Shown piece after piece: positions 6,416 to 64,000 of a DNA stretch of 64,000 bases. The position numbers and the translations under genes were made by a program. A model generated the notes under the pieces. That model worked only from the letters and a program-made list of their open reading frames with translations, was not told where the DNA came from and did no database searches. Where the stretch lies: positions 124,001-188,000 of the IMG/VR virus record IMGVR_UViG_3300031521_001337; one strand, given 5' to 3'. Within the stretch, counting starts at the first letter, position 1, and each line of letters begins with the position of its first letter.

Positions 6416-6421
6416 AACAAG

Positions 6422-14100: not shown

Positions 14101-14208
14101 TCTACCTGATAATAATTTTTTAATTTCATTAATATCAGTAACAGGTTTTTCAACTGAACCTAAATTATATTTCTTACCTCCAACGTTAAGTATTATTTCA
14201 CAACTCAT
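11140..14208 (-). CDS. Virion-associated protein C with zincin-like metallopeptidase domain (1022 aa with TGA=Trp)
   Basis: Fragments 13219, 13000, 12412, 11881 and 11323 are in frame; PLHEILHLVL (HExxH) plus downstream EE. Starts MSC, ends IQDCSY-TAA. Confidence 0.85.
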
Positions 14209-23162: not shown

Positions 23163-23169
23163 TTTTTAT

Positions 23170-31617: not shown

Positions 31618-31625
31618 ATTATTGT

Positions 31626-44680: not shown

Positions 44681-44681
44681 T

Positions 44682-45329: not shown

Positions 45330-45350
45330 ATTTTTATATTTTTTTTGTGT

Positions 45351-46460
45351 TTAGTAATAATCATATCCTTCATAATCATTGGAATCATAATTAAAAACAT
45401 TAGTTAGTAATTCAGAACCTGAGAGAGTATATTTATTTAAGTATATTGTTGGTAATTCATCTGTTACATCATCAGTAGTTCCAGGATTATTAAATACAGG
45501 AGTTATACTAAATTCTAATATATTTCCTTCTTCAGAAAATGGAATAGTAATTATATAATCATCTGTAGGTGAACCTAATATAATATCAGTTCATGTTCTT
45601 GTAGCTCAACCATCTAATGAATAGTTTATTCGTAAATGTGTAATATTTCAAGTAGTTTGATTATCAACAGAAATATTAAATGTAGCTTGATAACCTTGTC
45701 CATCTATTTGATCTAAATTATAATAATTTAAATGAAATAAAGGTAAATCTTCAAGTTCAACAGATAAAACTAATTTACCTTTAAAGTTATTTTTACAATA
45801 ATATTTGAAAGTTGGATCATCAAACCAAAATTGGTCAGTTAATGTTCCACCTTTAAAACGTGCATATTCATTTCATACATCCGTTGTAAGGTCAATAAAT
45901 CCATTAGTTAATTGAAGGTATAGTTTGACATTATATATTCTTAAATCTGATGAAATTCGTAAATTTCCTGAGTAATGATAGCGAGTTACATTTGATAAAT
46001 CTAAATCAACTCCTTCAAATACAGTATATTCTCCAGCTTTAAATATATAATTATTTAAAACATTAGAAGTAAATAATGAATATTTTGTTGGATCATTAAA
46101 TGTAAACTGAATTCCATTTCCTACTGATTCTTCTGTTAATATTTGTGGACATGGATAACTTCCAAACTCTACTTGATTAGTATTTTTATTAGCAGATACA
46201 ATATATAATACTCCACCAAATTCTCTTATTCCAATTGGATAAAATCCATCTGTTAAAGATATATATTTTGGAGTTTCTTCTGTCCAATCTGGTGCTTTAA
46301 TCTTTGTATTTCCAGCATCATTTTGTAATGCCATTTCATCTGAATTAAAAGTTATGAAAGTTCCATTTATACAATCAGTTAATGTATTAGAAGGCATCAT
46401 AATTGGATTAATATCGTAATTTAATCCTTCAGAAAAAGTATTTATTGTTTCTTTTTTCAT
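45351..46460 (-). CDS. Tail protein with muzzle/stabilization-like N-terminal domain (369 aa with TGA=Trp)
   Basis: NTFSEGLNYD..P...P...TDCINGT...LQNDAGN...GFYPIG..EFGG..YIVS...EFGSYP; reads through four TGA to TAA at 45351. Confidence 0.65.
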
Positions 46461-47404
46461 TAATTAAAAATTTTATATTTAATTATTATTTTCTGTCCAT
46501 CTTTAGTTTTACAATATTTAGTTTTTCCAGATAATACATTAGATGTAGATGAACTTGTTATATTATAATAATCACAAACATCTTTAGCACAATTAAAAGT
46601 TTTAATAAAATTATTTTCAAAATCAAAAATATCAACAATTATTGGTTTTAAAATTTTTTTATCTTCTAAATTAAAATTATCATCTTTATATCTTCAAATT
46701 AATCTTAAATTTTCTAATTTACCACATGTTTGTACTATTCGTTTACAATTTTTTGTCACAGAACTAGGGTCAACATTATAAAATTTTGCTCCATCTTTAA
46801 TACATTGAAATGTATTTATTAATGCTCCATCTTCTGTAAAAATATTAACCCCAAGTTGTAATCCTTCTTTTATTTTTTTAGATCTTTCAGGATTATTTTC
46901 ACAAGCTATTTTAGTATTAATTTTTATTTTTTCTTTATGTCCTTCAGAAAGTGAAATATTTAATTTAGCTTGTCTAATTCTTTCTTTAGATTCATCTGAT
47001 CTTTTTGTTCCTAATTGTAAATCTCTTAATTTTTTTCTAGTTTCTGCAGATACAATTCTTCCTTTACTCCCTATACCACCTAAATTAGAATTATATCCAT
47101 TTTCAAAAGAATCAAACTCTTTAATGTAACTAATTTCTAATTCAAATAATTCGTTATATAAAGAATCTTTATCTATATTCCTACAAATTTTAATAATTTC
47201 TCAATTAAAATTTTCTTCTCCATATTTACGGATTGCATTATAAAAATATGAATTTCGATCTTTATGCTTTTTATTTCTTGCAGCACTTAGATGTTCGGTT
47301 TTTCTTCTTTTTAAAGATCTAATTGTTTCACCAATATAACATTTATTGTTTAATTTACAAGTTGCTTTGTAAATATATCCTTCATATTCATTATCTTTCT
47401 TCAT
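46460..47404 (-). CDS. Free-standing GIY-YIG homing endonuclease with NUMOD3/NUMOD1-like repeats (314 aa with TGA=Trp)
   Basis: GYIY...YIGET...R..EH...FN[TGA]EII...ELEISYI...NGYN..LGG, then SAETRKK and SDESKERI repeats. Confidence 0.85.
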
Positions 47405-48410
47405 TTCTTAATTCTTGTCATGTTTTGTTAGATGGTGTGAACTTGTGTTCATAAGCTTCACCCATATATTCTAAATCTCTAACTTTTAAACTATCTGCTC
47501 AATAACTCCATCCTTTAAAAGTTTTACTTTTAAATCTAAATACATAAATATGTTTTGCTTTATAATAAAGTTCTTCCTTAATTTTACGAGGAATAATATT
47601 ATTAAATTTGACAATTGATTTGCTAGTTTTATTATCTTCTAATCATTTGTTAAATCCGGTTGGATTTAATCCTATATAGTAATATCCATCGAATGGAGTT
47701 TTCTTTCATCCTTCGATCTTTCTTAATTTTCTATCTCTACGAATACTGTATTCTTTAATCTGTATATCAGGAGTTAGTGTTAAATGTCCGATATAAGCTA
47801 AACAATTAATATGTCTTTTTGATATTATAGATATGGCACATCCATACTTTATAGCGGAATGCATACGTCTGAATCCATGTGTCAATAATCTTTTTATTTC
47901 AGGTTTTGTAAAAGTATTGAATTCCATTTGAACTTCATCTATAAAGTCATCTAAGAATACATCTTTTGTTGTGTAAAATTTAACTCCAGAGTTAACTCCT
48001 TCCATAAATTTTCTCTTTAATTCACTCCCAATATATATGGGAATCATTTTAGGATATGCTCTAGTTTTAAAATAATAATTCATAAAATATCCTGTAAAAT
48101 CAGATTCTACAAAATCAACTTCTTGAAATCGTCCATTCTGACGTTGTGTTATAAATTTATCACCCGTTACAATTTCGAAGTCTATATAAGACTCCGCAAC
48201 TGTAGGGATTACAAATCTAACTCTATCATCAATAACTCTATGTAATATTAAACCAAGACAATATCTAAAAGGACCAGCTATAGCATCTTCATATGTTGCA
48301 TTTCATCCATAAGTATCATTAAGATTCCTTCATTTTTTATCAGTAACCTTTGTAGGAGTATTTGAATAAATCTCCCCAGGTGTTAGTCCATGATTAAATA
48401 ATATACGCAT
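47391..48410 (-). CDS. Conserved late-region protein, possibly HU/IHF-like (339 aa with TGA=Trp)
   Basis: Open from ATG 48410 to TAA 47391 with six TGA; the HU/IHF resemblance is weak and partly positional. Confidence 0.55.
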
Positions 48411-49114
48411 TAACGAGTTGGTTTAAATGATTTACCGAAACGTTTTCTATCTCATGAAGAAGAAACATTAAGGATTTCATCCATTTCATTTTGATTTATA
48501 TATTCGGGTACTCTAGCTTGAGTACACATTAATTTTCATTTCTGTTCAAGTAATTGAGACATTTGAATTATTCCTGAATTCATAGTAATTAAACCTTTCT
48601 TAAAAAATTCAGCTTGCGCACAAAAAGCCGCAACAGCATCAATCTCTCTAACATCTAAATAAGGTAATCCTTCTTCATCAACAATAACTCCTTTATAAAG
48701 AATATTTATTTTATTAAATTTATCAGCTAATTGAATTGTGTTTCCGGTTTGTTGATATTTAATAAATTTACCTGATGAATATCCAAATCCTGTATTATAT
48801 TTTCTTGATTCAACATAACCTTCAATTCATCCATTTTGATTATTTCCAGCTAATGTTGTTGGTGTAGTCTTTTGATAATCTTCATAATCTGCTGTAACAG
48901 CTTCGATTATATCACAATTACAAGGAAGATCTACATAAAAACTACCATCAGCATTTTTTTCAGCTTCAGTTTGGTAGTGATATCATCTATATTGTTTGTT
49001 ACCTATTTTATCTCAAGCAATTAAACCTAATGTTTCAAATTCATCAGGGTTTATTTCAAGACCGTATAATTGTCTCATTTGAGTATACGCTGTATTAAAT
49101 GGAAATCTTTTCAT
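48410..49114 (-). CDS. Tail tubular/ring protein (234 aa with TGA=Trp; absent from the ORF track)
   Basis: MKRFPFNTAY...VDLPCNCD...ILYKGVIVDEEGLPYL...; five TGA; TAATG coupling at both ends. Confidence 0.75.
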
Positions 49115-49785
49115 TAATGAGGAGCTTGTGTGTTAGGTATGGGTTGAGCAGCCATTTGACGATAATAACGTAATTTCTTTTCAGTTAAACGTTTTTTAAT
49201 CTCAGCTGATATAAATGTATAATTTTCTAAATCATCTCCAGCACAACAATCATATTGTGTGAGTTGTCTTGGATCTTTTGGTATAAATATAATTGATACT
49301 TTCTTTAATAACGGAGTATTAAATACTCAACAATCATACATGTTATTTGCATTTGGTGTAGTATCAATATATACGTGAGGTTTATTAGAACCATGTCTAA
49401 GATATCTATGTGATCTAAATCCGTTAATTGTAGTATAAACTTTAAATACAATTTCTTTATGAATTGAACCTAAATAATCAATTGCATCACAACTTAAATC
49501 ATTTACTATTTGAGGAATTTCAAAATGCATTTCAGGTCTACTATAATCAGGAAGATTACAAGGACATTTATCTAATGATTTAGTATCAACATCTACACAA
49601 TTAATAGACATTACTAAATCTCTTTTTGGAACAATTCCTTTTAAAGAATATTCCTTAATAATTTGAAGACGTTCGTCAACACAATCATCTTCTAATTGTT
49701 GTAGTGATAAATTAGGAGTACTTGTTATACCAGCAAGACCTCCAATAATATCATTATATATAGCTGATGCTAATTTAGTTACCAT
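49114..49785 (-). CDS. Head-tail connector ring-type protein (223 aa with TGA=Trp)
   Basis: Track fragment 49327-49785 extends through one TGA to TAA at 49114; position within the crAss structural cluster. Confidence 0.65.
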
Positions 49786-49800
49786 AAGTTAGATTTAATA

Positions 49801-49831
49801 AAAAAGGGTGAGGCAAGACGCCCCACCCTTT
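49801..49831 (-). terminator. Rho-independent terminator
   Basis: Minus strand AAAGGGTGGGGC-GTCTT-GCCTCACCCTTTTT after the 49848 gene. Confidence 0.85.
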
Positions 49832-49847
49832 AAGTAATTAATTAATA

Positions 49848-50930
49848 TTAAGCGATTACTGTAATTGTGATTGTACCAGTTGCACCAGTAGCATCAGTAG
49901 CAGTAATTACTGTAGTTCCAGCAGCTACACCAGTAACTACACCAGTTCCAGCTACAACAGTAGCAGTAGCAGTAGTTCCAGAAGCGAATGTTACAGCTCC
50001 TAATGCTCCAACAGGAGTAATAGTAGTAGTATCACCTACGACGATTAAGTTATCATTAGTAGTTAATTGGAATGCACCAGCACCAGGACTAGAAGCTAAA
50101 ATAGATAAACCAGTATTAGTAATTGCAGTTTCAAATGTTGTTACATTAGCAGCAGGTACATAGAATACATGAGTTGTGATTGAATTACCTTCTGCGAGGA
50201 TTCCATCAGCACTATCTTTTTGGATTTTGTAACGAAGTGTATATTGAGAATAGTTTCCACCAATGATTGGTCTTTCTTCTTTGTTTGTACCAAAGAAACG
50301 AGTGTTTTCATAAGTAGGGAACATAATTGATCTTACCATGAAATCGTCATCTCCAAAACCAACAAGACCAGCAGTTGTAACTGTACCTGTAGCTTTTACT
50401 GTATATTCAGGTTGAATAATTGAGTTAGAGTTTAAAGTTAATGCAACTTCTTCAGTTTGTTTAATTGAGAAAAATCTTTGGTTATTATCAGTAGCGGTTA
50501 ATGTAATAATACCAGAACCACCAGAAGTAGCAGTGATATAAGAGAAACCGAATCTATCTTTAAGTCCGTTAATTTGAGCAATAAGAGCAGTTGCGTCAGT
50601 AGCAGCTACACCTGATGAAAGTACTTCAACTACAACCGGTTTTTTGAAATACAAATAAGTATTTGCATATTCAGAATTGGTTTGTTGAGATAATCTTACA
50701 TCTACTTCTAATCTATTTACTAGCCCACTTGTTGAAGCGGCGATTGTAATTGAAGCTACTTCTTTAACACCAGCACTATAAGCTTTTTTATAAACGCTTA
50801 CGATACCTGCTTTCTTGAAGAAATTTACTCTAGTTACATTCAGACCTTGGGCAGTTCCAGCATATTTAGCTGTAGAACCATTTGAATCTAATTGAGAATT
50901 TAAAATTGTTGTTGTTGTAAATTGATACAT
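49848..50930 (-). CDS. Auxiliary capsid/decoration protein with C-terminal Ig-like (Big_2-type) domain
   Basis: Thr/Val-rich tail VGDTTTI...ATV...GVVTGVAAGTTVITAT...ITVIA; no Trp; followed by a strong terminator. Confidence 0.7.
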   Translation of the reverse strand: MYQFTTTTILNSQLDSNGSTAKYAGTAQGLNVTRVNFFKKAGIVSVYKKAYSAGVKEVASITIAASTSGLVNRLEVDVRLSQQTNSEYANTYLYFKKPVVVEVLSSGVAATDATALIAQINGLKDRFGFSYITATSGGSGIITLTATDNNQRFFSIKQTEEVALTLNSNSIIQPEYTVKATGTVTTAGLVGFGDDDFMVRSIMFPTYENTRFFGTNKEERPIIGGNYSQYTLRYKIQKDSADGILAEGNSITTHVFYVPAANVTTFETAITNTGLSILASSPGAGAFQLTTNDNLIVVGDTTTITPVGALGAVTFASGTTATATVVAGTGVVTGVAAGTTVITATDATGATGTITITVIA

Positions 50931-50959
50931 TTTTTATAGTTTATATCATTTAAAAATAT

Positions 50960-52144
50960 TTATCTATGTCTTTGTTGTTGTTCTTGTTGTGGACCAGCTA
51001 CTGATGTATTAACAGGAATATGTGATTGTAATCTAGGATCACTAGCATTTTCCATTAATATATTAGTTAGTTCATTTATAATTTCTTGAACAACGTAATC
51101 TGGGAATTCTAATATTTGAGATGTATCTTCTACTGCATCTACCTGTTCTTGTGTAAGTCTGATAAATTGTGGAGATTTTAAATAATCTACATATATTCTT
51201 GTTGGTTGAAAAATCTTATCATCTTTTCCAAATCTTAACTCCATTCTAGTTGCATCTCTATTACCGTAGCGAATATCTTCTTCTCTAGTTATTAAAGATC
51301 TTTCAACACTTTCATAAGTTAAAGTACCTGATGTATTAGATTTAGATACTACAAATGTATCATACATTGATTTAATTGTTAATATATTAGTATTAACATC
51401 TAAAAAGTAGTATGCTCTTTGTATTTTAGGATCTGAACTTACAGATAATTTAGAATATAAATTTGCAAGAGTTCCATTATTAGTAGTATTTATTAATACT
51501 TCTAAAGGATTTGATATAGATGGTGAAGTTTTTAAAGTATATGTAATTCCATTTACTATAATTGTATCTCCATCTACTTCAGTTCCATCTAAATCTAATG
51601 TATAAATATTAAAATTAGTTCCCGATAAGATTGTTTTAGAATCTTCTGTTGGGAATGTATTTATTGTATTTACGTTATGAATATAAAAATAAGGATTAGA
51701 ATATGAAGGTCTTTGATAATAGTTATTAATTATTTGTGACCACATATCTCCAGTTAGACGTTTTGCACCCATTTGTAAATATGAATTAGCATTGTAACAT
51801 TTAAAAGATTTTAATACTTTATATTCTACAATACAATTCAAAATATGTACGTAATCTGGTGGTAAATCTACTTCATAAGTCGCTTGAAATAAAGGACTTG
51901 GTGAAGTAGGTGAGGTATAACCAGGGTATACCGTTTGTAATTTTGGTTCTAAAACAGCAGTACTTTTTAACACTCTCAAATCGTCAGTTTTCTGTTGATT
52001 CATGTCATAAGCGTTATACATTTTATTAACGTATTGCAAAATTGCTTTATTAATAAAATAGTTATAATCTTCCAACAATAAACTTGGAGCATTGACTTTA
52101 TTTAATTCTGTTAGAGCTGCTTCAAATAGTTGGCTAGCTGTGAT
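50960..52144 (-). CDS. Ring/connector-type structural protein, probable non-ATG start (ATC 52144 or ATT 52147)
   Basis: Frame is open upstream of track start 52078 (ITASQLFEAALTELNKVNAPSLLLEDYNY) up to an in-frame TAA at 52157-52159, with no ATG or GTG. Confidence 0.7.
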   Translation of the reverse strand: MTASQLFEAALTELNKVNAPSLLLEDYNYFINKAILQYVNKMYNAYDMNQQKTDDLRVLKSTAVLEPKLQTVYPGYTSPTSPSPLFQATYEVDLPPDYVHILNCIVEYKVLKSFKCYNANSYLQMGAKRLTGDMWSQIINNYYQRPSYSNPYFYIHNVNTINTFPTEDSKTILSGTNFNIYTLDLDGTEVDGDTIIVNGITYTLKTSPSISNPLEVLINTTNNGTLANLYSKLSVSSDPKIQRAYYFLDVNTNILTIKSMYDTFVVSKSNTSGTLTYESVERSLITREEDIRYGNRDATRMELRFGKDDKIFQPTRIYVDYLKSPQFIRLTQEQVDAVEDTSQILEFPDYVVQEIINELTNILMENASDPRLQSHIPVNTSVAGPQQEQQQRHR

Positions 52145-52168: not shown

Positions 52169-53062
52169 TTATATTATCTTATTTGGAGGATTATCTGATC
52201 TGGTTCATAAAAATCCATTACACGATCTTTTTAATTTTATAGCAGAACTAATACTAGCTAATTTTAAATCTAGTTTATTTTTAGCTTGAATAATAGTATC
52301 AAAACTATCAATATATATTCCATCTAAAGAATATCTATTTAATTTTTCTGATTTTTTATTAACTATTATTTGTAATTTATCATATTTTTCAGTACTTATA
52401 AAGTATCCTGAAATTTTATAATTTGCTCTAATAGCTCTATTAAGATTTCCAGAATTTGTATCTAAAAATAATATAGCATCTGACATTTTTTCAAATTCTT
52501 CTACTAAAAATCCATCAACATCATAAATATAATATTTATTAGGATTATGTAGATTATATTCTGAAATATTTATTAGATTATTATAACTCCATAAAAACCC
52601 ATTACAAGTTCTTTTTTCATTAATTGCTCCATATATATTAGATATATCTCTTTCTATAATTTTACTAGCTTCTATAGCAGATTCATATGATTTTAATAAA
52701 TTTCCGTTAAAATCAAATTGATAAACAAAATTATATGGTCTAGGTCTTCCTTTTCCACCTAATGATGTATTGTATGTTTTATCACTATTTATAAATTCTT
52801 CAGTAACTAATTCTGATTCTTTTATATACGCATCTTCTTCTTTTTCAAATACATATAAAATATCTCTTTTAAAATTTGATATTCCATGTTTTATTATTGC
52901 AAAATGAAAAGGACGAATAGGATAATTCAAATAATGTGTATTGTTTAAATTAAATCCATTTCCTAAATATCCATCAAAAATATCAGGATTTTCAGTTTTA
53001 TGTACTCCAATATAAATTTTATTGTTAATTAAACAAGTAGTTTTGTAAACAATGTATTTCAT
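52169..53062 (-). CDS. Free-standing GIY-YIG homing endonuclease with NUMOD1-like repeats (297 aa with TGA=Trp)
   Basis: YIVYKTT...KIYIGVHKT...DGYLGNG...AYIKESEL...TYN..LGG; three VYQF/YSLDG-type repeats; one TGA near the C-terminus. Confidence 0.85.
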
Positions 53063-53085
53063 ATATAATTATATTATGGTTAATA

Positions 53086-54082: not shown

Positions 54083-55513
54083 CTAAACTTCTTCAATAAT
54101 GAATGATTTATAAGGAGCGAATGCTGCAATACCAGAGTATCCTGCAACGATCAATTTAGATCCTGCGATTGGAGAACTAACGATACCACTAGTGATACCA
54201 TCTACACCACCAACACCTGGATATTTAGATGTTACAAATTCTGCACCTTCTAATGTAAATGCTGCGATAGCTGGTTGATTTGTTGAAACGTCAGGTGACA
54301 TATCAAGACAAATACCGTATCCTTTTCTATCATATTCTTTAGTAAGAGCACGATCAACCATGAATGTTACCATATTACCGGCAATTTCATAAGAAGTGAA
54401 AGTTCCACCAACTTTGATAGGATTATCAGCTTTAACCATTGATTGAGCTGCTTTAGAATACATCATTGTTGGAGTTGATCCCCACAATTTCAACCAGTCT
54501 CCTAAAGTAGAGTTAATTTGACCCCAAAGTCTATCATTAACAATAAATGTGTAACTGTTACCAATTGCATTTGCTGCTTTTTGATTCATTTGATCAATTA
54601 CTGTATTGATGATGTTTACATTCAATTTAGCATATTTATACTTAGATGCAAATCTTTCGATTTGAGGAATAAGACCATCACCCGCGATAAGTGGACGACC
54701 ATCTTCTGTAAGTACAGTAGATTTACCATTAACATCCATAGTTGTTTTTCCCCATAGTAAGTGGTTATTTTTAACTGTTTGGAAGTTTTCAAACAAATCT
54801 TTTTCCATTTTGTTTAACTTAAAGATCTTTTCTTTCAAGTCTCCAGCTCCATCTCCTGATGCAATTTTGATAAATTGATCTTCCATTTGAGCATAACGAG
54901 AAGAGTAAGAAATGTCATTTCTATGTTCTGTGATCCATTGACGATGTTTTTCAATGTTTGATTGATACTTAGTATAACCTTCTTCATGGTACTCAGGCAT
55001 AATATTAGATAAGAAACGAGTTGTTCCACCTACTTGACATGCTGAAGCATCAAGAATTGAAGAGAAATCTGCATCAATTAATTGAACCGTATATTCCCAG
55101 AATACATCTGCTTTTCTTTGTGGGGTTGCTTTAACAATACATTGCTGACGCGATCCGTCAATTTTGAATGTATCATATTTTTCATAATATCTTTCTTTGA
55201 AATACATTATGATATCTGCACCACCTGCACCAGTACCCGTTGGTGCTGCTGCGAATTCAACTCTTTTTACGAATTCTACATCAATTTCCCATTCTACCAT
55301 TAAGGTATTAAGTGGTTGAAATTTATTAGCTGTTTTAGAGTTGTAATAAATGTTCATTAAGGCTTCTGTTAAGAAAGTCGCTGTATTATGTGTATACATG
55401 CGAGCCATAACTCCCATCATTTTAGGACGAGTTCCTAAAAGTTTGTAGAAATCCTCATAGGTTCTACTGTGTGCCAATTCTGGCTTTACGTTAACGTAAC
55501 TTGCTACTACCAT
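54083..55513 (-). CDS. Major capsid protein, crAss-like
   Basis: 476 aa with crAss MCP-like blocks (VEWEID, PEYHEEGYTKYQSNIEKHR, LLWGK, GDGLIPQI); preceded by an acidic scaffold-like gene and followed by a hairpin; all 7 Trp are TGG. Confidence 0.85.
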   Translation of the reverse strand: MVVASYVNVKPELAHSRTYEDFYKLLGTRPKMMGVMARMYTHNTATFLTEALMNIYYNSKTANKFQPLNTLMVEWEIDVEFVKRVEFAAAPTGTGAGGADIIMYFKERYYEKYDTFKIDGSRQQCIVKATPQRKADVFWEYTVQLIDADFSSILDASACQVGGTTRFLSNIMPEYHEEGYTKYQSNIEKHRQWITEHRNDISYSSRYAQMEDQFIKIASGDGAGDLKEKIFKLNKMEKDLFENFQTVKNNHLLWGKTTMDVNGKSTVLTEDGRPLIAGDGLIPQIERFASKYKYAKLNVNIINTVIDQMNQKAANAIGNSYTFIVNDRLWGQINSTLGDWLKLWGSTPTMMYSKAAQSMVKADNPIKVGGTFTSYEIAGNMVTFMVDRALTKEYDRKGYGICLDMSPDVSTNQPAIAAFTLEGAEFVTSKYPGVGGVDGITSGIVSSPIAGSKLIVAGYSGIAAFAPYKSFIIEEV

Positions 55514-55527
55514 TGTAATCTAATTTT

Positions 55528-56526
55528 TTAAAAATTTAAGTCGTAAATGCTATTTTGTGTTTTGCCGGAAGGATTATTCCTAATAACGGCGGGTTTTGGT
55601 TTTATCTGTGATTTAAGTTTTGCTATCTCCGACTCATATGCATTCTTCAATGCATCGAATGAATCTTTTCCGTAACGTGAAAACCAAGCAAGTTCATATA
55701 ATTTTTTTGGATCATTTAAACTTTTATAAAACTCACTGGTTCCATTTTCGTCTAAATCCAAAATCTGTGAAAGTACTTCATTTTTTTCATCATCATCTAA
55801 CTCTATTCCGTAGAATTCTGGCGTTTGCAATGCCACATTAACCATAGTTTCAGAAAATTGGTTAAATTGTTCTTCTCTTTCGGTTTCAGCTTCTTGCTTT
55901 TGAGCTTCGTTATATTGATCTTCTAGTTGTTTATATTCTGTTCTAAGCACACCTACTTTTTTAGTAAATAATGCCTCATCTTGTAATTCTTTTTCTAATT
56001 CTCTAGCTAATTCTTCTTCGGTTAAATCATACTTTTGTTTTAAGTCTAATAAGAATAATTCTTGATCATCGTAAGAATCAATACTATATTCAGATGCAGC
56101 TCCTTGTGTAAATTCTTTAATTACTGAAGTTTTATATGCTTCAAGGAATTCTTCAACTGTTAAATTTTCACCTCTAATTTGATTAATAAGTTCAATTTCT
56201 TCATCATCTAAATCGTGATCTACAGGTTCTTGTTCTGGATCAGCAGCTTTTAAAATTTCTAATTGTTCTTCTTCTGTCAAATCATAGAAATCAATTTCTT
56301 GTTCATTATCGTTTTCATCCAAAACACTAATTTTAGAATTTTCAATTCCAAGTGTTTTAAGATATTTATTTAAAATAAACTCTTCGGTATCAGGTCCTTC
56401 GCTTTTTTCTGCAAAAAAGTCATCGACATCATCTCCAGGAATATCTAATTGTATTTCGGGTTCGTGTTGGGGGTTATCGGGCAAAAGATCGCCTTCAAAA
56501 AGTTCATCAAATTCATCCATATTCAT
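55528..56526 (-). CDS. Acidic coiled-coil protein upstream of MCP (putative scaffold)
   Basis: Very D/E-rich and helical; immediately precedes the MCP. Confidence 0.7.
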   Translation of the reverse strand: MNMDEFDELFEGDLLPDNPQHEPEIQLDIPGDDVDDFFAEKSEGPDTEEFILNKYLKTLGIENSKISVLDENDNEQEIDFYDLTEEEQLEILKAADPEQEPVDHDLDDEEIELINQIRGENLTVEEFLEAYKTSVIKEFTQGAASEYSIDSYDDQELFLLDLKQKYDLTEEELARELEKELQDEALFTKKVGVLRTEYKQLEDQYNEAQKQEAETEREEQFNQFSETMVNVALQTPEFYGIELDDDEKNEVLSQILDLDENGTSEFYKSLNDPKKLYELAWFSRYGKDSFDALKNAYESEIAKLKSQIKPKPAVIRNNPSGKTQNSIYDLNF

Positions 56527-56609
56527 TTATCATTTATAATGTGTATTATTTTTCTATCTATTAAATATATTCATCTTTCATAATGATTTTTATATATTCA
56601 TTATTTTAT

Positions 56610-56647
56610 ACAAAGTTACCACCTTTATCAACAATAAAATATATAAA
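56610..56647 (-). promoter_or_regulatory. Bacteroidota-type promoter (-7 box TAACTTTG at 56618-56611) for the capsid operon
   Basis: TAnnTTTG plus TTTAT 29 nt upstream, as at the other two sites. Confidence 0.65.
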
Positions 56648-56680
56648 CTATAAACTTTATTGAAAATAATTGTGGTAACT
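56614..56680. repeat. Imperfect 25-bp inverted repeat with 17-bp spacer
   Basis: AGTTACCACCTTTATCAACAATAAA (56614-56638) versus TTTATTGAAAATAATTGTGGTAACT (56656-56680): 20/25 complementary, outer 9 bp perfect. Confidence 0.6.
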
Positions 56681-56691
56681 ATTAAGATGCA

Positions 56692-57207
56692 CTAATTGAA
56701 GAATTTAACTTCGCCAGTATTAAATAACATAGCTTCAGACTGACGTCTAAAACTTAATCCTTTTAGAACTTTACCTCCAGCTTTATTTCACATCATGAAT
56801 GCATGTTCAATATTAGCAGGAGTATCTTTTGCAATAATCCTTTTTAAAAGTGTACTCTTTGCAAGAGATCCAAATCCTACATTATATGAAAATGAAATTA
56901 AAGCTTCATATTGATTCTGAGTTAAATCTAACTTCAATTTATCAATTTGTTTAGCAAATAGTTCCAAATCAACCTTTAACATTTTAGTAGCATCTTCAAT
57001 AGTATTAAGTTTATGATAACTATATGCTTTTTCTTTATTTTCAGCACCTCTAATCATTTTACCATCTCTATCTAATATAACTTTTCCATAACCTTCAGTT
57101 CAGATTCCAATAGGATCCATTTTAGGTTGAAGTCCAATATGAGAGAGATCTCCGTCATGGAGACTCTCATAATGGGATACTAATTTAATCAGTTTGTCTG
57201 TAATCAT
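56692..57207 (-). CDS. Endolysin, GH24 phage lysozyme (171 aa with TGA=Trp)
   Basis: HYESL...MDPIGI[TGA]TEGYG...LTQNQYEALISFSYNVG...FMM[TGA]NKAGGKVLKGL..RRQSEA; both TGA are at conserved W positions. Confidence 0.9.
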
Positions 57208-57208
57208 T

Positions 57209-57493
57209 TTATTTATTTAATTCAGAGAATATTGTATCAACATCTATTACAATTGTACTTCTAATTAATACTTCTGTATTTGAAGTAAAATTAAAATTAA
57301 AATTTATATTATTTTCAATTCCAGGATTATTCGATACATTAAAATTTCCTTTATTAACACCTTCTATATTAGCAGAGCCATTAAAAGATATTATTTTACT
57401 TTCTTTAATTGAATAATTGAAAGTATAATCTACATTTCCAATTGTTACTTTAGCTTCAACACTAGTTGATTCATTTGTTTTTGTAATTTCCAT
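57209..57493 (-). CDS. Hypothetical protein
   Basis: 94-aa ORF between the FISUMP gene and the endolysin; not hydrophobic enough for a holin. Confidence 0.7.
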   Translation of the reverse strand: MEITKTNESTSVEAKVTIGNVDYTFNYSIKESKIISFNGSANIEGVNKGNFNVSNNPGIENNINFNFNFTSNTEVLIRSTIVIDVDTIFSELNK

Positions 57494-57518
57494 AATTTTA
57501 TTTTATTAATTTTTTATT

Positions 57519-58622
57519 TTATAATCCACCTTTAGCATAATGATATGTTCCACTATTTGTAGGAGATACTGAAAGTAATGTTAATCCAGTAAAATAACCT
57601 CCGATTATAGTACTAGTTGATTGAGATTGTCCTGATGATATTGTTAAATTAGCTCCTGATACATTAAATGATCTTCCTGCAGCAGCATCATAATAACTAT
57701 AATTAAATGTTATAGTAACATTTGTATTTACAACAACTGCACTCGGTGATCCTGCATATACTGAATACGCATACATTTTTCAATTTGTACCATCATATAA
57801 ATAATCTACATATATTTCAACATATGTATCATTAATTACATAATTATCTGCATAAGCTCAAGCATCATTATTATTGTAACTACAACAAGCTCCACTAGTT
57901 AAAGTAGATCATGTAGTATTATCAGTTACTATTGAAATATCATTTCCATTTCTATATTTAGTACCTCTTAAATTTGATGCCATTCATACTTGATTACCAA
58001 TTTTTACTGTCTTATAAGTATAACCACTATTATCAGTCATTATACCTGAATTAGTAGAATCATCTTTGATTAATCTAACTGAAGCACCTGTTGCAGATCC
58101 ACCACCTTCTAAACTAACTCATTCAGAATCATAATGCATATCCATCATAGTTGAAGTAGATAAATATAATCCAGTCTGTTTTATATATGCAAAATTTCCA
58201 GTATTATATCTAAATCCTCCGCCGACAGCAGCAAATTGATATATATCTGTAGCATTAGTATTTGGAGTTAACCAATGAGTTGTATTTGCTTCTTTCAATT
58301 TTCCACCACCTGTAGTTGTTCCTCCAATAGTTGAAACTAAAGTTTCTAATTCTGTTAAAGTTGGAACATGTCATCCACTTGGAGATATATTTCTAGAATC
58401 TAATACAGCATATGAATTATATAATCTACCATAACCACCATTAGGTAGTATGTGTTGATAGTTTCTAAAATTATATAAACTGTTTTTACTACCTACGTAG
58501 TTACTATCAAATGCACCAATAGCAGCGGAGAATAACTCAGTTAAACTCCTATTACTACTATCAGCATATATTTCAGTAACTACATCTCTTTGATTAAAAT
58601 GATCATTATCTGGAACTGACAT
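57519..58622 (-). CDS. FISUMP (Fibrobacter succinogenes major paralogous) domain protein, circularly permuted (367 aa with TGA=Trp)
   Basis: YGRLYN...PSG[W]HVPT...GKLKE...SVRLIKD comes before YKTVKIGNQV[W]MASNL...YRNG; six TGA. Confidence 0.8.
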
Positions 58623-61410
58623 ACTTTTCCTCCAATTGTTTTATTCTTGATTCAGCACTAGCAAGTTTTGCTATTATCAAGTCAATGTATTTTACTTTAT
58701 ATTCACCCTCTCTATTTCCAACTACAAATTCACTAAATCCATTAGATAATAAATCTTGAGCAATAGTACCAAATCTTAATTCTTCTAAGTTATTTTTAAA
58801 ATTAAATGAAACTAAATTGAGCCTACTATAGTCTTTAATGATTGGTTGAATATTAGTCTTTAAAGTTCTATCTGACGATAAAATAAAATTACTAGCAGTA
58901 ACATTACCATTGAAATGAGAATTATCACTTCCATCAATATAAAATGGAGTTGTACCATCGGAAGCATTTCTAATTGAAAATCCAGTGTTTGAAATTCCTT
59001 GTATTGAATTTTTAATATAGTATTGCTTAACTCCTGCTTGTGAACCTTGTAATTGTATTCTTGCCTCACCTCCAACATCATTTCTAATTAGCACAGCACT
59101 TTTGTTAATTAGAGCAATATCACCTGTTCCACTTTCAGCACTAATATATACTGCATTGCCAGTAAACTGTAAGTAACCTTGTCTAACTGTATTTGCTGAA
59201 TTATAACCACTCAAATAAGCGGCATCAGCAATCATTTTTATTCCCTCACCTGCATAAGTATTAACAGTTCCAGTTGCCATTAAAGTACCATTCACTGCCA
59301 ACTTATACCCTTGGTCAGAAATATATCCAATCCCAGTATTACCATTAGGGCTAATATAAAACCTCCCAATATCGGGTACTGTATTAGCACTTTGGGTTGA
59401 TTGAGTAGTAATTGCAAAATCTCCATAAGACTGATAATCTGTATGTATGAACCATTTCCTAGAACTACCATTAGATACATTATGGTCAAATGATAACATT
59501 CCTACCCAACCTGAACCGCTAGGCAATGATAATCTTCCGTTAATTCCCATCCCACCATTAAGAACTAATGCTCCTGTTGATGGTGATAGTGATTGAGTTG
59601 TGTTTGGTATACTTACTACTCCATTACTTTCAATAGTCAATAAGGGAGTAGTTGCATAATTAAAAGTAAAGGCTTTGTTTCCCCACTGTCCAACAGAATT
59701 AAAAATCATTGACCCATAATTATCTCCACTACTAATAAAATAGTCAAAAGAAGAACCTGAACCAAATTTTAATTTACCTGAATAATTATTAGATGGTATA
59801 TTAATAGCAAAATAATCACCTCTAGCTGATGCATTTGTCCCATCATCACTTATCAAACTATTTACAAAATTACTCCCATTCCATTTAGGAATGTAGTTTG
59901 TTGATAAACTTGATAAATCTTGTGTAGCAATATTATTTACGCCAATAAAATTTCTAATTTGAGTACTAGTAGCAGGACTCATTCTAGCATTAGGGGCATC
60001 GTATACCATTACATAACTTACCGTAGACGCAAAATCAGCGCCATAGTATTTTAAACCATTTACCATTTCAGCATTCAAATTCCCCACCATAGTAGTAGAA
60101 TTTACAGTTAATGGTGCTGTTCCAGTTGCTACTGTTGATTGTAGTTGAGTTGCATTTACTGTAGAAGTAAAAGTTACTGCTCCTGTTTTACTTAACCTAA
60201 ATCTTTCTGTATAAGTATGTGCAATAGCTTCTGTATTGTATGCTCTAGCATCAGAATAATCAATTACTAAATCAGTACCACTTCCACTGTATTTGTTGGC
60301 AATTCTATAAACTCTTTGGTCAGTTCCACCATCGGCATATAAGTACATAGCACTACCATAATCAGAATCCAATGCTCTTAATTCAACACTATGATATGTT
60401 ACACCAAATTTGCCTTTTCCATACGCTGTAACATCCCCACTAATCCACATATTTGCAGATTGTGCAGAGCTATTTTGGTTTAATATGTGGTCGTTATTGT
60501 TGGTATAAGCCGATGAACCTAGACCTAACCAAGATTGTATTTGATTTTGTGTAAAATTATAAACATATCCGTTAGAGTAACCTCCTAGTAAATTAGTAGG
60601 TACGGATTGATTAGCAGTTCCATTATATACTGTTCCTAGTGTTATACTAGAGCCTAAAGTCCCACTAGAAGATACAAAGTCTCCAGTGTTACTACTGGCT
60701 GCTGAACCGAATGTTCTAGTAGGTAGTGGAGTATAACCTAAAGCAGTAGTAACCATTCCTGAGTTGATACCAGTTATCCATCCACCGTAGTTACCAAGAT
60801 TATTATTAAATTGACTGAGATTAGTAGGTCTTGCTGCTGTCAATGCATAAGGTGCTAAACTACTTGCAGTTATAAAACCATTTGGATTAGTTGAATTATA
60901 AGGTACATATCCCAAAGCATTAGTAACAAGTGTTGAACTAATTTGTGTTAATGCTCCATTCTCAACACCAATCAATCTATTATTCATTTGATTGATTGTG
61001 TAGGCATTGAATGTATCAGTTAATGTTGCATTACTGAAAGAACCACCTAAATTAGCATAACCGAATACTGTTTGTATTAGTCCACCAGATCCAGAACCAC
61101 CAGAAGTAACACCAAATGCACAAACTTCACCTTTAACAGATAAATTACCATTACTATCTAAAGTCATTAAATCAGTGAATGTTCCATCTGTATTAACAGT
61201 TGAAAAATTTCAACCATTATCGGTTAACAAATAATTAGAAAGTGGTAATTTTATCACACCATTAGCACCAGCCAAATTAGTTGACTGTGCTACTAATGAT
61301 AAATAATTAAGTGGTACATAAGCACTACCAGAACCACCAGAACTATAATTATTAATAGCAGTAGTTGTTGAACCTCTTTGTAAGGCTATATTTTTACTTT
61401 GAAATTCCAT
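58606..61410 (-). CDS. Tail fibre/spike with C-terminal peptidase S74 intramolecular chaperone (934 aa with TGA=Trp)
   Basis: 61210 fragment joins in frame through one TGA; VT.ALGY.P repeats, GTAPLTVNST, SSDRTLKTNI...GTIAQD...VKY and a terminal coiled coil. Confidence 0.85.
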
Positions 61411-61437
61411 TTTATTATTGTTTTACTGTTGTTTCTG

Positions 61438-63552
61438 TTATTTCTTTGATACTATATTCAATAGATTAGTATCATTTTTTATATCTATACTCATACCATC
61501 AACAATAAATTTTTCAGTTGGAAAAATACTATTTATTGTTAGTAATGAATACGGTTTAAATATATTAGCCAGCGTTATATTTAGTTTTTTGGCTGGTGTT
61601 GAATACTGATTCACATAAGACTGGATAATGTTGTATTCTTGTTTCTGGTCAATTCCTAAAGCCTTTGTTTTGATACTTTGATTGTATGTATAATCTGTAC
61701 CTATTTTTTGAATAACAGATGAATAATTCAATCCTTTATTTGTATCACTACATACTTTTAAATTCATATCAGAAAATTCATTTACAAACGCTGTATTGAT
61801 TACGTTTTTATATTCTGTATCTGTTTCCGCTTTTTTCTCACTTGTAGGTTTAACTAACTTGATGTCAAAATCTTTCAATCATACAGCACCACAAGTACCA
61901 CCCTTATATATTTCAGATGGTTCATATAATGAAAACTCAATATCACCGAATAACATATCTGCCTTTTTAATGGTTATTTTATTACCAACTTCATTTATAA
62001 ATGCTGTTGTATCAACTTCGTTTAATATGTTTTTCCAGTTGTTATAAAGATGTCCATCTTTGTATTCAAACTTAATTGGGAAAGTCATTTCAATATTAGT
62101 TCAATACTTTTGATAACCGTTCCAGTATTTATTTCCGATCTTTAATTTTGCATATAATAATACGTAAGTTGATAAATAATAATCACCTGTAGATGCTTTT
62201 TTACTTTCATCTATATAAGCTACATTAACCGCTGAATCCCAATAAGCAGAGCCACTAATTATTAAATAGTAATCATCATAAAAATAACTACCCTCATTGC
62301 TTGATGAATATTTCAGTACAACATTATTTGTACAGTCAAGCCAAGTTTGTAAAGGTAATGCGCCAGTTGGTGCAACATATCCAGACCTATAAAGACAAAC
62401 ATAATCAGAGAAACTAACAGAAGAACTTAATGCTACATTATTTTCATAGTTTGCCATTCTTACAAAGGATGCACCCTCTTTAGTTGATATTGTATCATAA
62501 TCAAGTTCGGTTAATTCAGACCAAGTACCACCAGTTTTATTATATGTTTTGTATTTATCATTTTTGAAATATTTAAACACATAGTTCTTACTTCCATAAG
62601 TTTTAGGAATAGAAGAAAACCAGTTTGTTGTTCCTGTTACTTTTGTAATGTTGGTTAGATCATCATCAGAAAAAAACTCTGGTATCAAACTATCATTTGT
62701 GCTTACACTGGTTTTAATGCTTACTTGATTATAAACCTCAGCTAATTCAATACTAGCACCATTCGATTTAAAACTTTCATTTGTAACATCTACTGTATTA
62801 CTTAATGTTGTGTAGCCAGTTGAATAATTCAACCAATTGTTTGCAGTAGTATAGGTATGATAGTTTACAAATCCACCTTTTATATAATCATAGTTCAATA
62901 TATAAACCTCATCACCATCTGCTACAATTGTATAGTTTAGGAATTGAAGAAGCTGTGTTAGTACTTCTTTGTATGTTATTGCTTCGTTATCATCAAAGAA
63001 ATTTTGCTCAGCTACGAGTAATTTATCTATGATTTTTTGATCTTCAAAGCCCGGTAAATAGTTGTTTTCATTCACGTATATTTTAGAATAGCAATTACAC
63101 TTTTTGATGATATGAATCAATAAATCTTCAAAGCTTTTTATCTTTCTGTTTACCAGATCAACCGTTTCAAATTTGTAATTGTCTAATGTACTCAAACCAT
63201 CTATTGCTTCAAGTTCAATACTTTCATAATGTTGTTCAAAGCCTTGTGTATATATGTTTGGTGTCAAGTAACCAACTCATTTAATCAGATTATTATCAAC
63301 ATCTTTCAAAGTCATTTTAGTACCTTGTGCAGTTGCTGAATAAAGGTTGAAATTGTAACTATCAGATATAATTGTACAAGTTGCATTTGATAATTTCAAC
63401 GGTTCGTAAATTGTACTATTTGTATTTAATTCGATTTTAAATGGTTCATCTGAGAAAATAATCTCAGATGTTCCACTATTACCATCATTCACATTTATAT
63501 CCACTTGATATAAAGTGTTACTTATATTTTTAAATTGTCCTGTGTAAATCAT
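61438..63552 (-). CDS. Siphovirus-like tail-tip protein (704 aa with TGA=Trp)
   Basis: Fragments 63277, 62101, 61879 and 61438 are in frame; MIYTGQFKN...EPF...[W]VGYLTPNIYTQ...ELEAIDGLSTL resembles the gene that follows the tape measure in Bacteroides siphophages and prophages. Confidence 0.7.
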
Positions 63553-63553
63553 A

Positions 63554-64000
63554 TTACTTTGCTTTGCTTTTTATATTATCATAGTTAGTTAGAACGCCTT
63601 TTAAATTCTTTCCCTCAATAATAAATTTTACTTCACTATTATTTGTTGTAGTTCAATTTATACCACCTTGACCATTTAAAAGAGCAAATAGTGTACTTTG
63701 TTGACCTTGATTTAATATCATTTCACCAGCATTTACTCTAGCTAGTATTTTATCACCAGAAATAGAACCACCTTGTACAATACCACCGTTTGCAAACTTT
63801 GGAATACTTGAAGCTAATATAGCACCTTGCATTACTCCAATTTGAGCCAATGCTAAACCTTCACCTACAAAGGGAATAAAAGCATAAGCTGCTGCTGTTT
63901 CTGCTGCCATAAGTCCAGTATAAGAAGCTGTTTCTGCAACATTGGTTGCAATTTTAGCTGCTGCTGTTCCCGCTTCAATTCCTGCTTGTGTTTGTTTTGC
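63554..64000 (-). CDS. C-terminus of a tape-measure-like protein (starts beyond the window)
   Basis: Ala-rich helix, IPFVG, IPKFANGGIV...GDKILARVNAGEMILNQGQQ..LF, then [TGA]...EVKFIIEGKNLKGVL.NY-TAA. Confidence 0.75.

What the first reader, a model, noticed from the sequence alone, without database searches (positions are those of the whole stretch)
58606..64000. Siphovirus-type tape-measure and tail-tip module joined to a crAss-like (short-tailed) capsid/RNAP module
Seen: a tape-measure-like C-terminus, a 704-aa tail-tip-like gene, an S74 tail fibre, a FISUMP gene and a lysozyme run directly into the crAss scaffold/MCP operon, while crAss ring and muzzle-like genes are also present at 40421-52144. 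Established: characterised crAss-like phages are podoviruses without a tape measure. The module also contains in-frame TGA-Trp (63653, 63277, 62101, 61879, 61210), so it shares the recoded regime, which argues against a simple join to a standard-code prophage. Inference: a captured receptor-binding module, a hybrid virion architecture, or a chimera of two recoded phages.
Basis: partly seen in the sequence, partly recalled or inferred. Interest (0 to 1): 0.78.

Follow-up and report, generated by a model that had tools for sequence, protein, structure and literature searches.

The report
Two phages merged by assembly
The tape-measure/tail-tip genes and the crAss-like capsid genes sit side by side only because the assembler crossed a 1.9-kb tail-fibre segment shared by two phages: a 28.7-kb temperate siphovirus and a ~177-kb crAss-like phage, so this is most likely not a hybrid virus.

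Summary
The join is not a biological feature.

- **Source.** The window is bases 124001-188000 of a 213,486-bp IMG/VR contig from peat.
- **Repeat.** That contig passes an exact 1,945-bp repeat R (window 58881-60825, inside the 939-codon fibre gene) three times.
- **Two loops.** One loop from R back to R is 28,661 bp. It is a complete HK97-type temperate siphovirus: TerS, TerL, portal, protease, capsid, tube, tape measure, 704-aa tail-tip protein, its own fibre, endolysin and serine integrase. The other loop is 176,645 bp of crAss-like phage.
- **Assembly signature.** Other contigs stop exactly 77, 99 or 127 nt into R. Assemblies that cross R link its flanks in three different ways.
- **Reads.** In four peat runs no contig bridges R, alternative paths leave at both ends, and the siphovirus side is 1.8-2.8 times deeper than the crAss side.
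- **Relatives.** crAss-type relatives have no siphovirus genes upstream of scaffold/MCP. Siphovirus relatives are prophages of Paludibacter (TGA-recoded) and Parabacteroides (standard code).

What remains real: two unrelated TGA→Trp late-gene-recoded phages share a near-identical distal fibre module, which implies a common Bacteroidales host. Short reads cannot exclude a minority cointegrate.

The parts
63554..64000 (-). C-terminal 148 codons of the siphovirus tape-measure protein. The full gene is 1,077 codons and continues beyond the window end.
   Evidence: phrog_24676 tail length tape measure, E 1.9e-14. Full ORF at L003 6490-9723.
61438..63570 (-). Siphovirus 704-aa protein directly after the tape measure, with three in-frame TGA. 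It is a distal-tail or tail-tip protein by position; it matches no family.
   Evidence: Conserved after the TMP in Paludibacter, Parabacteroides and Sodaliphilus prophage loci at 30-83% identity. Weak atlas leads to Sipho_Gp37 and Prophage_tail.
60826..61422 (-). Siphovirus-specific N-terminal 199 codons of the fibre gene (virion anchor). The assembly path junction lies at 60825/60826.
   Evidence: 94.6% nt identity to siphovirus contig L004 stops in this region. Identity to crAss-context contig L011 starts only at window 60825.
58881..60825 (-). R: a 1,945-bp exact repeat (648 codons, no TGA) shared by the siphovirus fibre and the crAss-like phage fibre. It is the graph node through which the two genomes were merged.
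   Evidence: 100% identical in all three passes of the 213-kb contig and in L011, L045, L048 and L052. Contigs end 77, 99 or 127 nt into it. Logan contigs break at both ends.
58606..58880 (-). crAss-context C-terminal 91 codons of the fibre, including the Peptidase_S74 intramolecular chaperone.
   Evidence: PF13884, E 9e-8. Continuous with L011, L009, L012 and L010. The siphovirus has its own different S74 C-terminus (E 4.6e-21).
57519..58640 (-). FISUMP-domain gene of the crAss-like phage, with six in-frame TGA.
   Evidence: PF09603 on two adjacent pieces. phrog_21885. A paralogue of 495 codons lies upstream of the crAss fibre (L011 728-2215).
57209..57502 (-). 98-codon gene of unknown function in the crAss-like phage.
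   Evidence: no family match.
56692..57216 (-). Phage lysozyme (GH24 type) of the crAss-like phage.
   Evidence: PF00959, E 6e-16; phrog_7 endolysin. Homologues upstream of the scaffold gene in crAss-type relatives L018, L019 and L038.
55528..56526 (-). Acidic 332-aa scaffold-like protein of the crAss-like phage.
   Evidence: Conserved directly upstream of the MCP in all crAss-type relatives at 44-65% identity. No family hit.
54083..55519 (-). crAss-type major capsid protein.
   Evidence: PF23898 Crass_capsid, 48 bits against a cut-off of 27. 32 related loci found.

Best explanation
The window is a piece of a metagenome contig that traverses a figure-of-eight in the assembly graph. Two separate phage genomes from the same peat samples share a 1,945-bp stretch (R) of their tail-fibre genes that is identical in every IMG/VR contig holding it.

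- **Genome 1** is a 28,661-bp temperate HK97-type siphovirus. It has a large serine integrase and no tRNA.
- **Genome 2** is a 176,645-bp crAss-like phage.

Both genomes read TGA as Trp in their late genes only.

R is longer than a read pair, so the assembler could not tell which entry into R goes with which exit. It walked sipho loop → R → crAss loop → R → sipho again. This placed the siphovirus tape measure, tail-tip gene and fibre N-terminus directly upstream of the crAss fibre C-terminus, FISUMP, lysozyme, scaffold and MCP.

**Shown:** the repeat, the two closing loops, contig ends at k-mer offsets, inconsistent phasing between assemblies, unequal depth on the two sides, and the absence of siphovirus genes in crAss relatives and of crAss genes in siphovirus relatives.

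**Inferred:** each phage builds its own virion. Each mounts the same distal fibre part on a different N-terminal anchor (199 codons in the siphovirus, 817 in the crAss-like phage) and folds it with its own S74 chaperone. The two phages therefore attack the same Bacteroidales host, probably Paludibacter-like, and exchanged the fibre module recently.
For: 1. **Window identity.** The window tail is 100% identical to contig 3300031521_001337 at positions 168086-188000.
2. **A complete second structural set lies upstream of the tape measure.** It comprises TerS, TerL (ATPase and nuclease domains), Phage_portal, Peptidase_S78, Phage_capsid, a gp6 connector and a tube protein. The same loop carries its own fibre C-terminus (S74), an M15 endolysin and a serine recombinase.
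3. **R occurs three times in the contig.** In sense direction its starts lie at 213486, 184825 and 8180, giving periods of 28,661 and 176,645 bp. The third pass repeats the first over all 4,765 bp available. A 64.8-kb contig gives the same period, 28,660 bp.
4. **The breakpoint is sharp.** Contig L011 is 99.98% identical from the first base of R onward and unrelated upstream of it.
5. **Contigs end 77, 99, 127, 127, 127 and 127 nt inside R** (L002, L001, L040, L046, L009, L012). Phasings observed: crAssN-R-crAssC (L011), crAssN-R-siphoC (L045, L048, L049), and siphoN-R-crAssC only in the 213-kb contig.
6. **Logan contigs of four peat runs**. None bridges the stretch. A siphoC continuation leaves at 58881 in all four runs, and a crAssN continuation leaves at 60825 in three. 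Depth on the crAss side against the sipho side is 6.7 vs 18.4, 22.8 vs 46.4, 49.1 vs 88.4 and about 5.6 vs 15.8.
7. **Relatives.** Eleven or more crAss-type relatives (MCP 65-93% identical) have giant fibre ORFs, not siphovirus genes, upstream of the scaffold. Their longest contigs are 172 and 178 kb. Siphovirus relatives are about 28-kb viral contigs and prophages in Paludibacter, Parabacteroides and Sodaliphilus genomes, with no crAss genes.
Against: - Short reads give the same four junctions for 'two circles' and for 'a cointegrate plus excess free siphovirus'. A minority of real cointegrates, formed by homologous recombination at R in co-infected cells, is therefore not excluded.
- R depth equals the sum of the two flanks only in run X8. 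In X1, X4 and X10 it is about the siphovirus depth, and variant paths leave R at 58984 and at 59830/59845. Many crAss genomes may therefore carry a diverged middle of R, and the 100% identity seen in IMG/VR contigs may partly come from strain collapse by the assembler.
- Three of the four full crossings from crAssN exit to siphoC rather than crAssC. That count is too small to carry meaning, but it is not the 'native' majority.
- I saw only about 85 kb of the 176.6-kb crAss loop.
Confidence: 0.86

Rival explanations
1. A genuine 205-kb cointegrate. The siphovirus and crAss-like genomes recombined at R by homologous recombination and exist, at least in part of the population, as one molecule carrying two direct copies of R.
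For: Both recombinant junctions are present in the 213-kb contig, and crAssN-R-siphoC recurs in two other contigs. 1.9 kb of perfect identity is ample substrate for recombination if the phages co-infect. Both phages occur in all 24 runs listed.
Against: The same junctions are expected from unresolved assembly. Contig ends fall at exact k-mer offsets. Depth differs 1.8-2.8-fold between the two sides. A parental crAssN-R-crAssC contig exists (L011). By inference, the cointegrate would be 16% longer than the crAss loop, which itself matches its relatives' 172-178 kb, and seven times the siphovirus genome, so neither capsid is likely to package it.
Confidence: 0.08
2. Hybrid virion. One phage genome encodes a crAss-type head and transcription apparatus together with a siphovirus-type long tail that has a tape measure.
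For: The genes are adjacent, on the same strand and in the same recoded regime in the window.
Against: The tape-measure side comes with its own terminase, portal, protease, HK97 capsid, connectors, lysis gene and integrase, and it closes on itself in 28.66 kb. crAss-type relatives lack all of these genes. The only connection between the two sides is the repeat R. The solved crassvirus virion is described with a muzzle and cargo proteins (abstract terms of PMC10172136); that it has a short tail without a tape measure is my own knowledge of that paper, which I did not open.
Confidence: 0.02
3. Phage-in-phage lysogeny. The siphovirus integrated into the crAss-like genome using its serine recombinase.
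For: The siphovirus encodes a 577-aa large serine recombinase that is free of TGA.
Against: In the contig the siphovirus is opened inside its fibre gene, at a 1,945-bp homologous repeat present on both sides. It is not opened at a short att site next to the integrase, which lies about 8 kb away. The close relative is integrated in a 432-kb Paludibacter MAG contig, that is, in bacterial DNA.
Confidence: 0.01

Closest known systems
Inter-genome repeat chimeras in short-read metagenome assembly (figure-of-eight de Bruijn graph)
   Same: An exact repeat longer than the insert size is shared by two replicons. Contigs end k nucleotides into the repeat. Different assemblies phase the flanks differently. 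Depth differs between the flanks.
   Different: Here the repeat is itself informative: it is the receptor-binding part of a tail fibre shared by phages of two different architectures. The resulting contig also carries an 8.18-kb terminal duplication, so it can pass for a complete circular genome.
Small alternatively coded temperate phages (Garnet and Topaz prophages; Borges et al., bioRxiv 10.1101/2021.08.26.457843)
   Same: The genome is 22-34 kb and temperate. Structural and lysis genes are recoded while the integrase is free of in-frame stops. These phages integrate in standard-code Bacteroidota or Firmicutes. Many recoded genomes in that study have no detectable suppressor tRNA (35-40% do).
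   Different: Those two examples are TAG→Gln phages from gut samples. This one is TGA→Trp, comes from peat, and is related to a Paludibacter prophage. Its Parabacteroides relatives still use the standard code.
crAss-like phages with TGA→Trp reassignment confined to late genes (Yutin et al. 2021, PMC7886860)
   Same: The MCP passes the Pfam crassvirus capsid model. There are giant downstream ORFs. Late genes are recoded while the early genes (ligase, ThyX, phosphoesterase) are TGA-free.
   Different: This phage is environmental (peat), has a loop of about 177 kb, and is very distant from the gut groups: most structural proteins hit no family. I did not test membership of Crassvirales beyond the MCP.
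Receptor-binding module sharing across morphotypes, for example the P22 (podo), 9NA (sipho) and Det7 (myo) tailspikes (own knowledge, not checked here)
   Same: The N-terminal virion anchors differ, the distal receptor-binding part is the same, and a C-terminal S74-type chaperone is present.
   Different: Here the shared part is identical at the nucleotide level over up to 1.9 kb, which implies a very recent exchange. The partners are a crAss-like jumbo-sized phage and a small temperate siphovirus.

Membership tests
Assembly chimera through a shared repeat | An exact repeat is present in both source genomes, and each genome closes on itself through it. | tested here: met
   R is 1,945 bp and 100% identical in three passes. 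The loops are 28,661 and 176,645 bp.
Assembly chimera through a shared repeat | Independent assemblies break at the repeat or phase it differently. | tested here: met
   Contig ends lie 77, 99 or 127 nt into R, and three different phasings are observed. No Logan contig bridges R in four runs.
Assembly chimera through a shared repeat | Unequal abundance of the two flanks. | tested here: met
   The sipho-to-crAss depth ratio is 1.8-2.8 in four runs. This does not exclude a minority cointegrate.
Assembly chimera through a shared repeat | Long molecules show only the parental phasings. | not testable with these tools
   Only short-read-derived contigs were available.
HK97-type temperate siphovirus (tape-measure side) | Own packaging and head genes: TerS, TerL, portal, S78 protease and HK97-fold MCP. 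| tested here: met
   PF05119, PF03354 with PF20441, PF04860, PF04586 and PF05065, all above their cut-offs.
HK97-type temperate siphovirus (tape-measure side) | Long non-contractile tail set: tube, chaperone, tape measure, distal tail protein, and no sheath. | tested here: inconclusive
   Tube: phrog_1407 (E 2e-9); PF06199 is just below its cut-off. Tape-measure C-terminus: phrog_24676. No sheath-sized gene lies between the connectors and the TMP. The chaperone and the 704-aa protein are assigned by position only.
HK97-type temperate siphovirus (tape-measure side) | Lysogeny functions, and relatives that are prophages. | tested here: met
   Large serine recombinase (PF00239 with PF07508). Colinear relatives occur in Paludibacter, Parabacteroides and Sodaliphilus genome contigs.
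Crassvirales-like phage (capsid side) | Crassvirus-type major capsid protein. | tested here: met
   PF23898, 48 bits against a cut-off of 27.
Crassvirales-like phage (capsid side) | P22-like portal, crAss-type TerL, ring and muzzle proteins, giant virion RNAP. | tested here: inconclusive
   The 740-codon ORF upstream of the fibre gives only a sub-threshold P22_portal match (E 0.006). The proposed ring and muzzle ORFs and the giant ORFs gave no family hit except a UvrD-like helicase. RNAP motifs were not examined.
Crassvirales-like phage (capsid side) | No tape measure or tail tube in the genome. | tested here: met
   None is present in crAss-type relatives within 9-10 kb upstream and 10 kb downstream of the MCP, nor in the 14.7 kb upstream of the crAss fibre. 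Only about 85 of 177 kb was seen.
Late-gene TGA→Trp recoded phages | In-frame TGA at conserved Trp positions in late genes, with early and lysogeny genes TGA-free. | tested here: met
   TGA at W in the FISUMP G-W-H-V-P and V-W-M motifs. Trp codons (TGA:TGG) are 92:58 in crAss late genes and 24:14 in sipho late genes. crAss early genes are free of in-frame TGA, and sipho integrase-side genes use 0 TGA and 13 TGG.
Late-gene TGA→Trp recoded phages | Phage-encoded TGA suppressor tRNA. | tested here: not met
   ARAGORN and Rfam find no tRNA in the whole 28.66-kb siphovirus, nor in about 85 kb of the crAss loop. The remaining 92 kb or so of the crAss genome was not seen. According to Borges et al., only 35% of code-4 phages have a detectable suppressor tRNA.

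The most novel reading that the evidence does not exclude
The small temperate siphovirus has TGA-recoded late genes but no suppressor tRNA of its own. It may complete its lytic programme only when the co-resident crAss-like phage switches the cell's code. That phage shares its host, its reassigned codon and its fibre tip, and was found with it in all 24 runs listed. This would be genetic-code hitch-hiking between two phages, with occasional real cointegrates at R as a by-product. Borges et al. raised the idea in general terms. This pair would be a concrete natural system in which to test it.
Probability: 0.06. Interest if true: 0.8.

Novelty: not a real feature. Interest (0 to 1): 0.22.

Why it matters
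- **Database quality.** A 213-kb 'UViG' that looks like a complete jumbo phage, with an 8.2-kb terminal duplication, is in fact two genomes. Taken at face value it would seed false claims of a long-tailed crassvirus or a two-capsid phage. It would also inflate genome-size and gene-content statistics.
- **Host clue.** The shared fibre module ties an uncultured ~177-kb environmental crAss-like phage to a siphovirus whose nearest relative is a prophage in a Paludibacter MAG. That suggests a Paludibacter-like host to try for isolation.
- **Recoding.** This adds a TGA-recoded small temperate phage. Its integrase side is in standard code and its Parabacteroides relatives are standard-code, which is useful for studying how recoding arises.

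Tried and rejected
- **Family searches on the 704-aa protein and on R.** Pfam and PHROGs gave nothing for the 704-aa protein pieces or for R. A PDB sequence search with R gave nothing. The protein atlas gave only viral hypothetical proteins and weak leads.
- **Exact-product look-ups.** Look-ups of the chimeric 853-aa fibre product and of the crAss-native 716-aa product found no record, probably because the called starts differ. I could not count assemblies per phasing this way.
- **tRNA and Rfam scans.** No suppressor tRNA was found in anything fetched.
- **Host with genetic code 4 or 25.** Rejected. The TGA positions align with Trp, the early and lysogeny genes avoid TGA, and the relatives sit in standard-code Bacteroidales.
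- **Integrase-mediated insertion.** Rejected. The siphovirus is opened at a homologous repeat, not at an att site next to the integrase.
- **Trp codon usage in R.** R has 0 TGA and 7 TGG, a hint of origin outside both recoded late regions (naive p about 0.001). I do not rely on it, because several crAss late genes, including the MCP, also lack TGA.
- **Direction of fibre transfer.** Only weakly indicated. A second siphovirus (L007) carries a segment 91% identical to R (aa 396-642), while no crAss-type relative does.
- **Not done.** I did not predict structures and did not walk the remaining ~92 kb of the crAss genome.
Full report
**1. The observation**

On the minus strand the window is read with TGA as a sense codon. 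Code-4 ORFs cover 57 kb against 46 kb under code 11. The region 54083-64000 then resolves into these genes:

| Window position | Gene | Evidence |
|---|---|---|
| 63554-64000 | Tape-measure C-terminus | phrog_24676, E 1.9e-14 |
| 61438-63570 | 711-codon gene (704 aa from Met 63552) | No family match |
| 58606-61422 | 939-codon fibre | Peptidase_S74 at the C-terminus |
| 57519-58640 | FISUMP gene | Two adjacent pieces match adjacent parts of PF09603 |
| 57209-57502 | 98-codon gene | No family match |
| 56692-57216 | Phage lysozyme | PF00959 |
| 55528-56526 | Acidic scaffold-like protein | Position, conservation in relatives |
| 54083-55519 | Major capsid protein | PF23898 Crass_capsid, 48 bits against a cut-off of 27 |

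**2. What lies beyond the window**

Searches of IMG/VR with the 391-aa piece of the tail-tip gene and with the MCP returned 39 loci. The window is 100% identical to IMGVR_UViG_3300031521_001337 (213,486 bp) and corresponds to its bases 124001-188000.

Upstream of the tape measure there is not a crAss gene set but a full second head-and-tail module. All of it is TGA-recoded:
- TerS (Terminase_4) and TerL (ATPase and nuclease domains)
- HK97-type portal (PF04860, E 2e-42)
- S78 prohead protease
- HK97-family capsid protein (PF05065)
- gp6-like connector and head closure protein
- tube protein and a chaperone-sized gene
- the 1,077-codon tape measure

Two different capsid systems side by side called for a check of the join.

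**3. The join is a path through a repeat**

crAss-type relatives (MCP 65-93% identical, contigs up to 172 and 178 kb) carry giant fibre ORFs upstream of the scaffold and MCP. They carry none of the siphovirus genes.

Contig L011 is 99.98% identical to the window's contig from one precise base inside the fibre gene onward, and unrelated before it. There it has a 1,556-codon fibre with a different 817-codon N-terminus. The siphovirus contigs L001 and L002 stop exactly 99 and 77 nt after that base. L040 and L046 stop 127 nt after it. L009 and L012 begin 127 nt before a second boundary. These numbers are the k-mer sizes I know as the metaSPAdes series (own knowledge).

Pattern searches showed that the 213-kb contig contains this segment three times. 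I call the segment R. It is 1,945 bp and lies at window 58881-60825. Pairwise comparison gives this order in sense direction:
- R, then the siphovirus continuation, through to the siphovirus fibre N-terminus: 28,661 bp.
- R, then the crAss fibre C-terminus, FISUMP, lysozyme, scaffold, MCP, the whole crAss genome and the crAss fibre N-terminus: 176,645 bp.
- R, then the siphovirus continuation again: 8,180 bp, identical to the other contig end over all 4,765 bp I could compare.

A 64.8-kb contig from another sample shows the same 28,660-bp period. Full crossings of R exist in three phasings:
- crAssN-R-crAssC in L011
- crAssN-R-siphoC in L045, L048 and L049
- siphoN-R-crAssC only in the 213-kb contig

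This is the signature of an unresolved repeat joining two circles into a figure of eight.

**4. Reads**

The stretch occurs in at least 24 peat metagenome runs. I laid Logan contigs of four runs on window 57801-63800.
- No contig bridges the stretch, and the breaks fall at 58881 and 60825.
- At 58881 all four runs show an alternative continuation whose reverse complement encodes the siphovirus fibre C-terminus (…SNGNVIAAGE…, compare).
- At 60825 three runs show the crAss N-terminal continuation.

| Run | crAss-specific depth | Siphovirus-specific depth |
|---|---|---|
| X1 | 6.7 | 18.4 |
| X8 | 22.8 | 46.4 |
| X10 | 49.1 | 88.4 |
| X4 | about 5.6 | 15.8 |

In X4 the siphovirus path siphoN→R→siphoC is carried by two contigs that overlap by 30 nt.

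One caveat applies. R depth equals the sum of the flanks only in X8. In the other three runs it is close to the siphovirus depth, and variant paths leave R at 58984 and at 59830/59845. Many crAss genomes therefore probably carry a diverged middle of R, and the perfect identity in IMG/VR contigs may partly reflect strain collapse. At least 127 nt at each end of R is shared exactly.

**5. The two genomes**

*Siphovirus.* I rebuilt the siphovirus circle at 28,661 bp with 29.3% GC. Besides the structural genes it carries:
- its own 961-codon fibre: a 199-codon anchor, R, and a 114-codon S74 chaperone (E 5e-21)
- a Peptidase_M15 endolysin
- a 577-aa large serine recombinase
- an AlaX-like tRNA_SAD protein
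- HTH proteins and two HNH endonucleases

It has no tRNA by ARAGORN or Rfam. Its late genes use TGA for 24 of 38 Trp codons. Five integrase-side ORFs use 0 TGA and 13 TGG.

Its nearest genomic relative is a colinear, TGA-recoded element in a 432-kb contig of a Paludibacter sp. MAG, at 80-97% aa identity for most proteins. Prophages of Parabacteroides segnis and P. gordonii are colinear at 65-75% for the head genes but use the standard code. This matches the published pattern of small recoded temperate phages whose integrase stays in standard code (Borges et al.).

*crAss-like phage.* The crAss-like genome shows the published late-gene-only TGA→Trp pattern (Yutin et al. 2021). Its plus-strand early genes (ligase, thioredoxin, phosphoesterase, ThyX) have no in-frame TGA. 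Apart from the MCP, its structural ORFs match no family. A 740-codon ORF upstream of the fibre gives only a sub-threshold P22_portal hit. I therefore call it crAss-like on the MCP and on gene order, not on a full membership test.

**6. Mechanism**

*Shown:* the adjacency is a graph path.

*Inferred:* each phage makes its own particle, and the two share the distal 648 residues of the fibre. Each phage mounts this part on its own anchor and folds it with its own autocleaving S74 chaperone. They should therefore recognise the same receptor on a Paludibacter-like host. Nucleotide identity of this degree implies a recent exchange.

A second siphovirus (L007) has a segment 91% identical to R while no crAss relative does. 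This weakly favours a siphovirus-to-crAss direction of transfer.

**7. Rivals**

- **Real cointegrate formed by recombination at R.** It cannot be excluded with short reads, because it yields the same four junctions. It can be at most a fraction of the siphovirus population, and it fits neither capsid by size.
- **Integrase-mediated phage-in-phage insertion.** Excluded by the position and nature of the junction.
- **Hybrid virion.** Contradicted by the completeness and self-closure of the siphovirus genome and by the crAss relatives.

**8. Verdict**

The gene calls are right, but the headline feature is an assembly artefact. What remains is ordinary in kind: fibre-module sharing between phages, late-gene recoding, and a recoded temperate phage. 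It is still useful as a host clue and as a warning about this IMG/VR record.

Noticed in passing
IMGVR_UViG_3300031521_001337, bases 1-8180 and 205307-213486 (L049, L047): The 213-kb contig has an 8.18-kb direct terminal duplication, verified over 4,765 bp. It is the third pass through R plus the siphovirus continuation. The duplication could make the chimera pass completeness checks as a circular genome.
   Followed up: partly
window 52169-53068; loci L025, L026 and L029-L035: A GIY-YIG/NUMOD homing-endonuclease gene (phrog_314, E 1e-27) lies two genes downstream of the MCP in the window. In several relatives a homologue sits between two fragments of the MCP gene, which suggests intron- or HE-split capsid genes of the kind reported for crAss-like phages.
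   Followed up: no
sipho circle 7376-7834 (L047 4381-4839, + strand): A 152-aa AlaX-like tRNA_SAD protein (PF07973, E 1e-10, no TGA) is encoded next to the integrase of a recoded phage that has no tRNA gene. A possible link to the code switch is unexplored.
   Followed up: no
window 58881-60825 (R): R has seven TGG and no TGA Trp codons, although about 61-63% of Trp codons in the late genes of both phages are TGA. In three runs Logan contigs also show a 158-nt skip (59908→60067) and short high-depth pieces at 59871-60117, which suggests an internal repeat or length variant in the fibre.
   Followed up: partly
L088 (Paludibacter sp. MAG JAFLKK010000008, 394991-415350) versus L089 and L090 (Parabacteroides): Colinear relatives of one siphovirus lineage differ in genetic code. 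The Paludibacter-associated members have 1-6 in-frame TGA per late gene, while the Parabacteroides prophages have none. This pair is suited to dating the recoding.
   Followed up: partly
window 23170-31629 and 14208-23165; L046 14031-14867: Two giant ORFs of 2,820 and 2,986 codons are present, and the first contains a UvrD/SF1 helicase domain. A GroEL-like (Cpn60_TCP1) fragment is encoded upstream of the crAss packaging region. Neither was studied further.
   Followed up: no
window 1-5600, + strand: The early/replication block has no in-frame TGA and at least one gene ending in TGA. It contains a ligase fragment, thioredoxin, a metallophosphoesterase, ThyX and a MazG-like gene. The code switch therefore falls at the strand switch near 6.4 kb.
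   Followed up: partly
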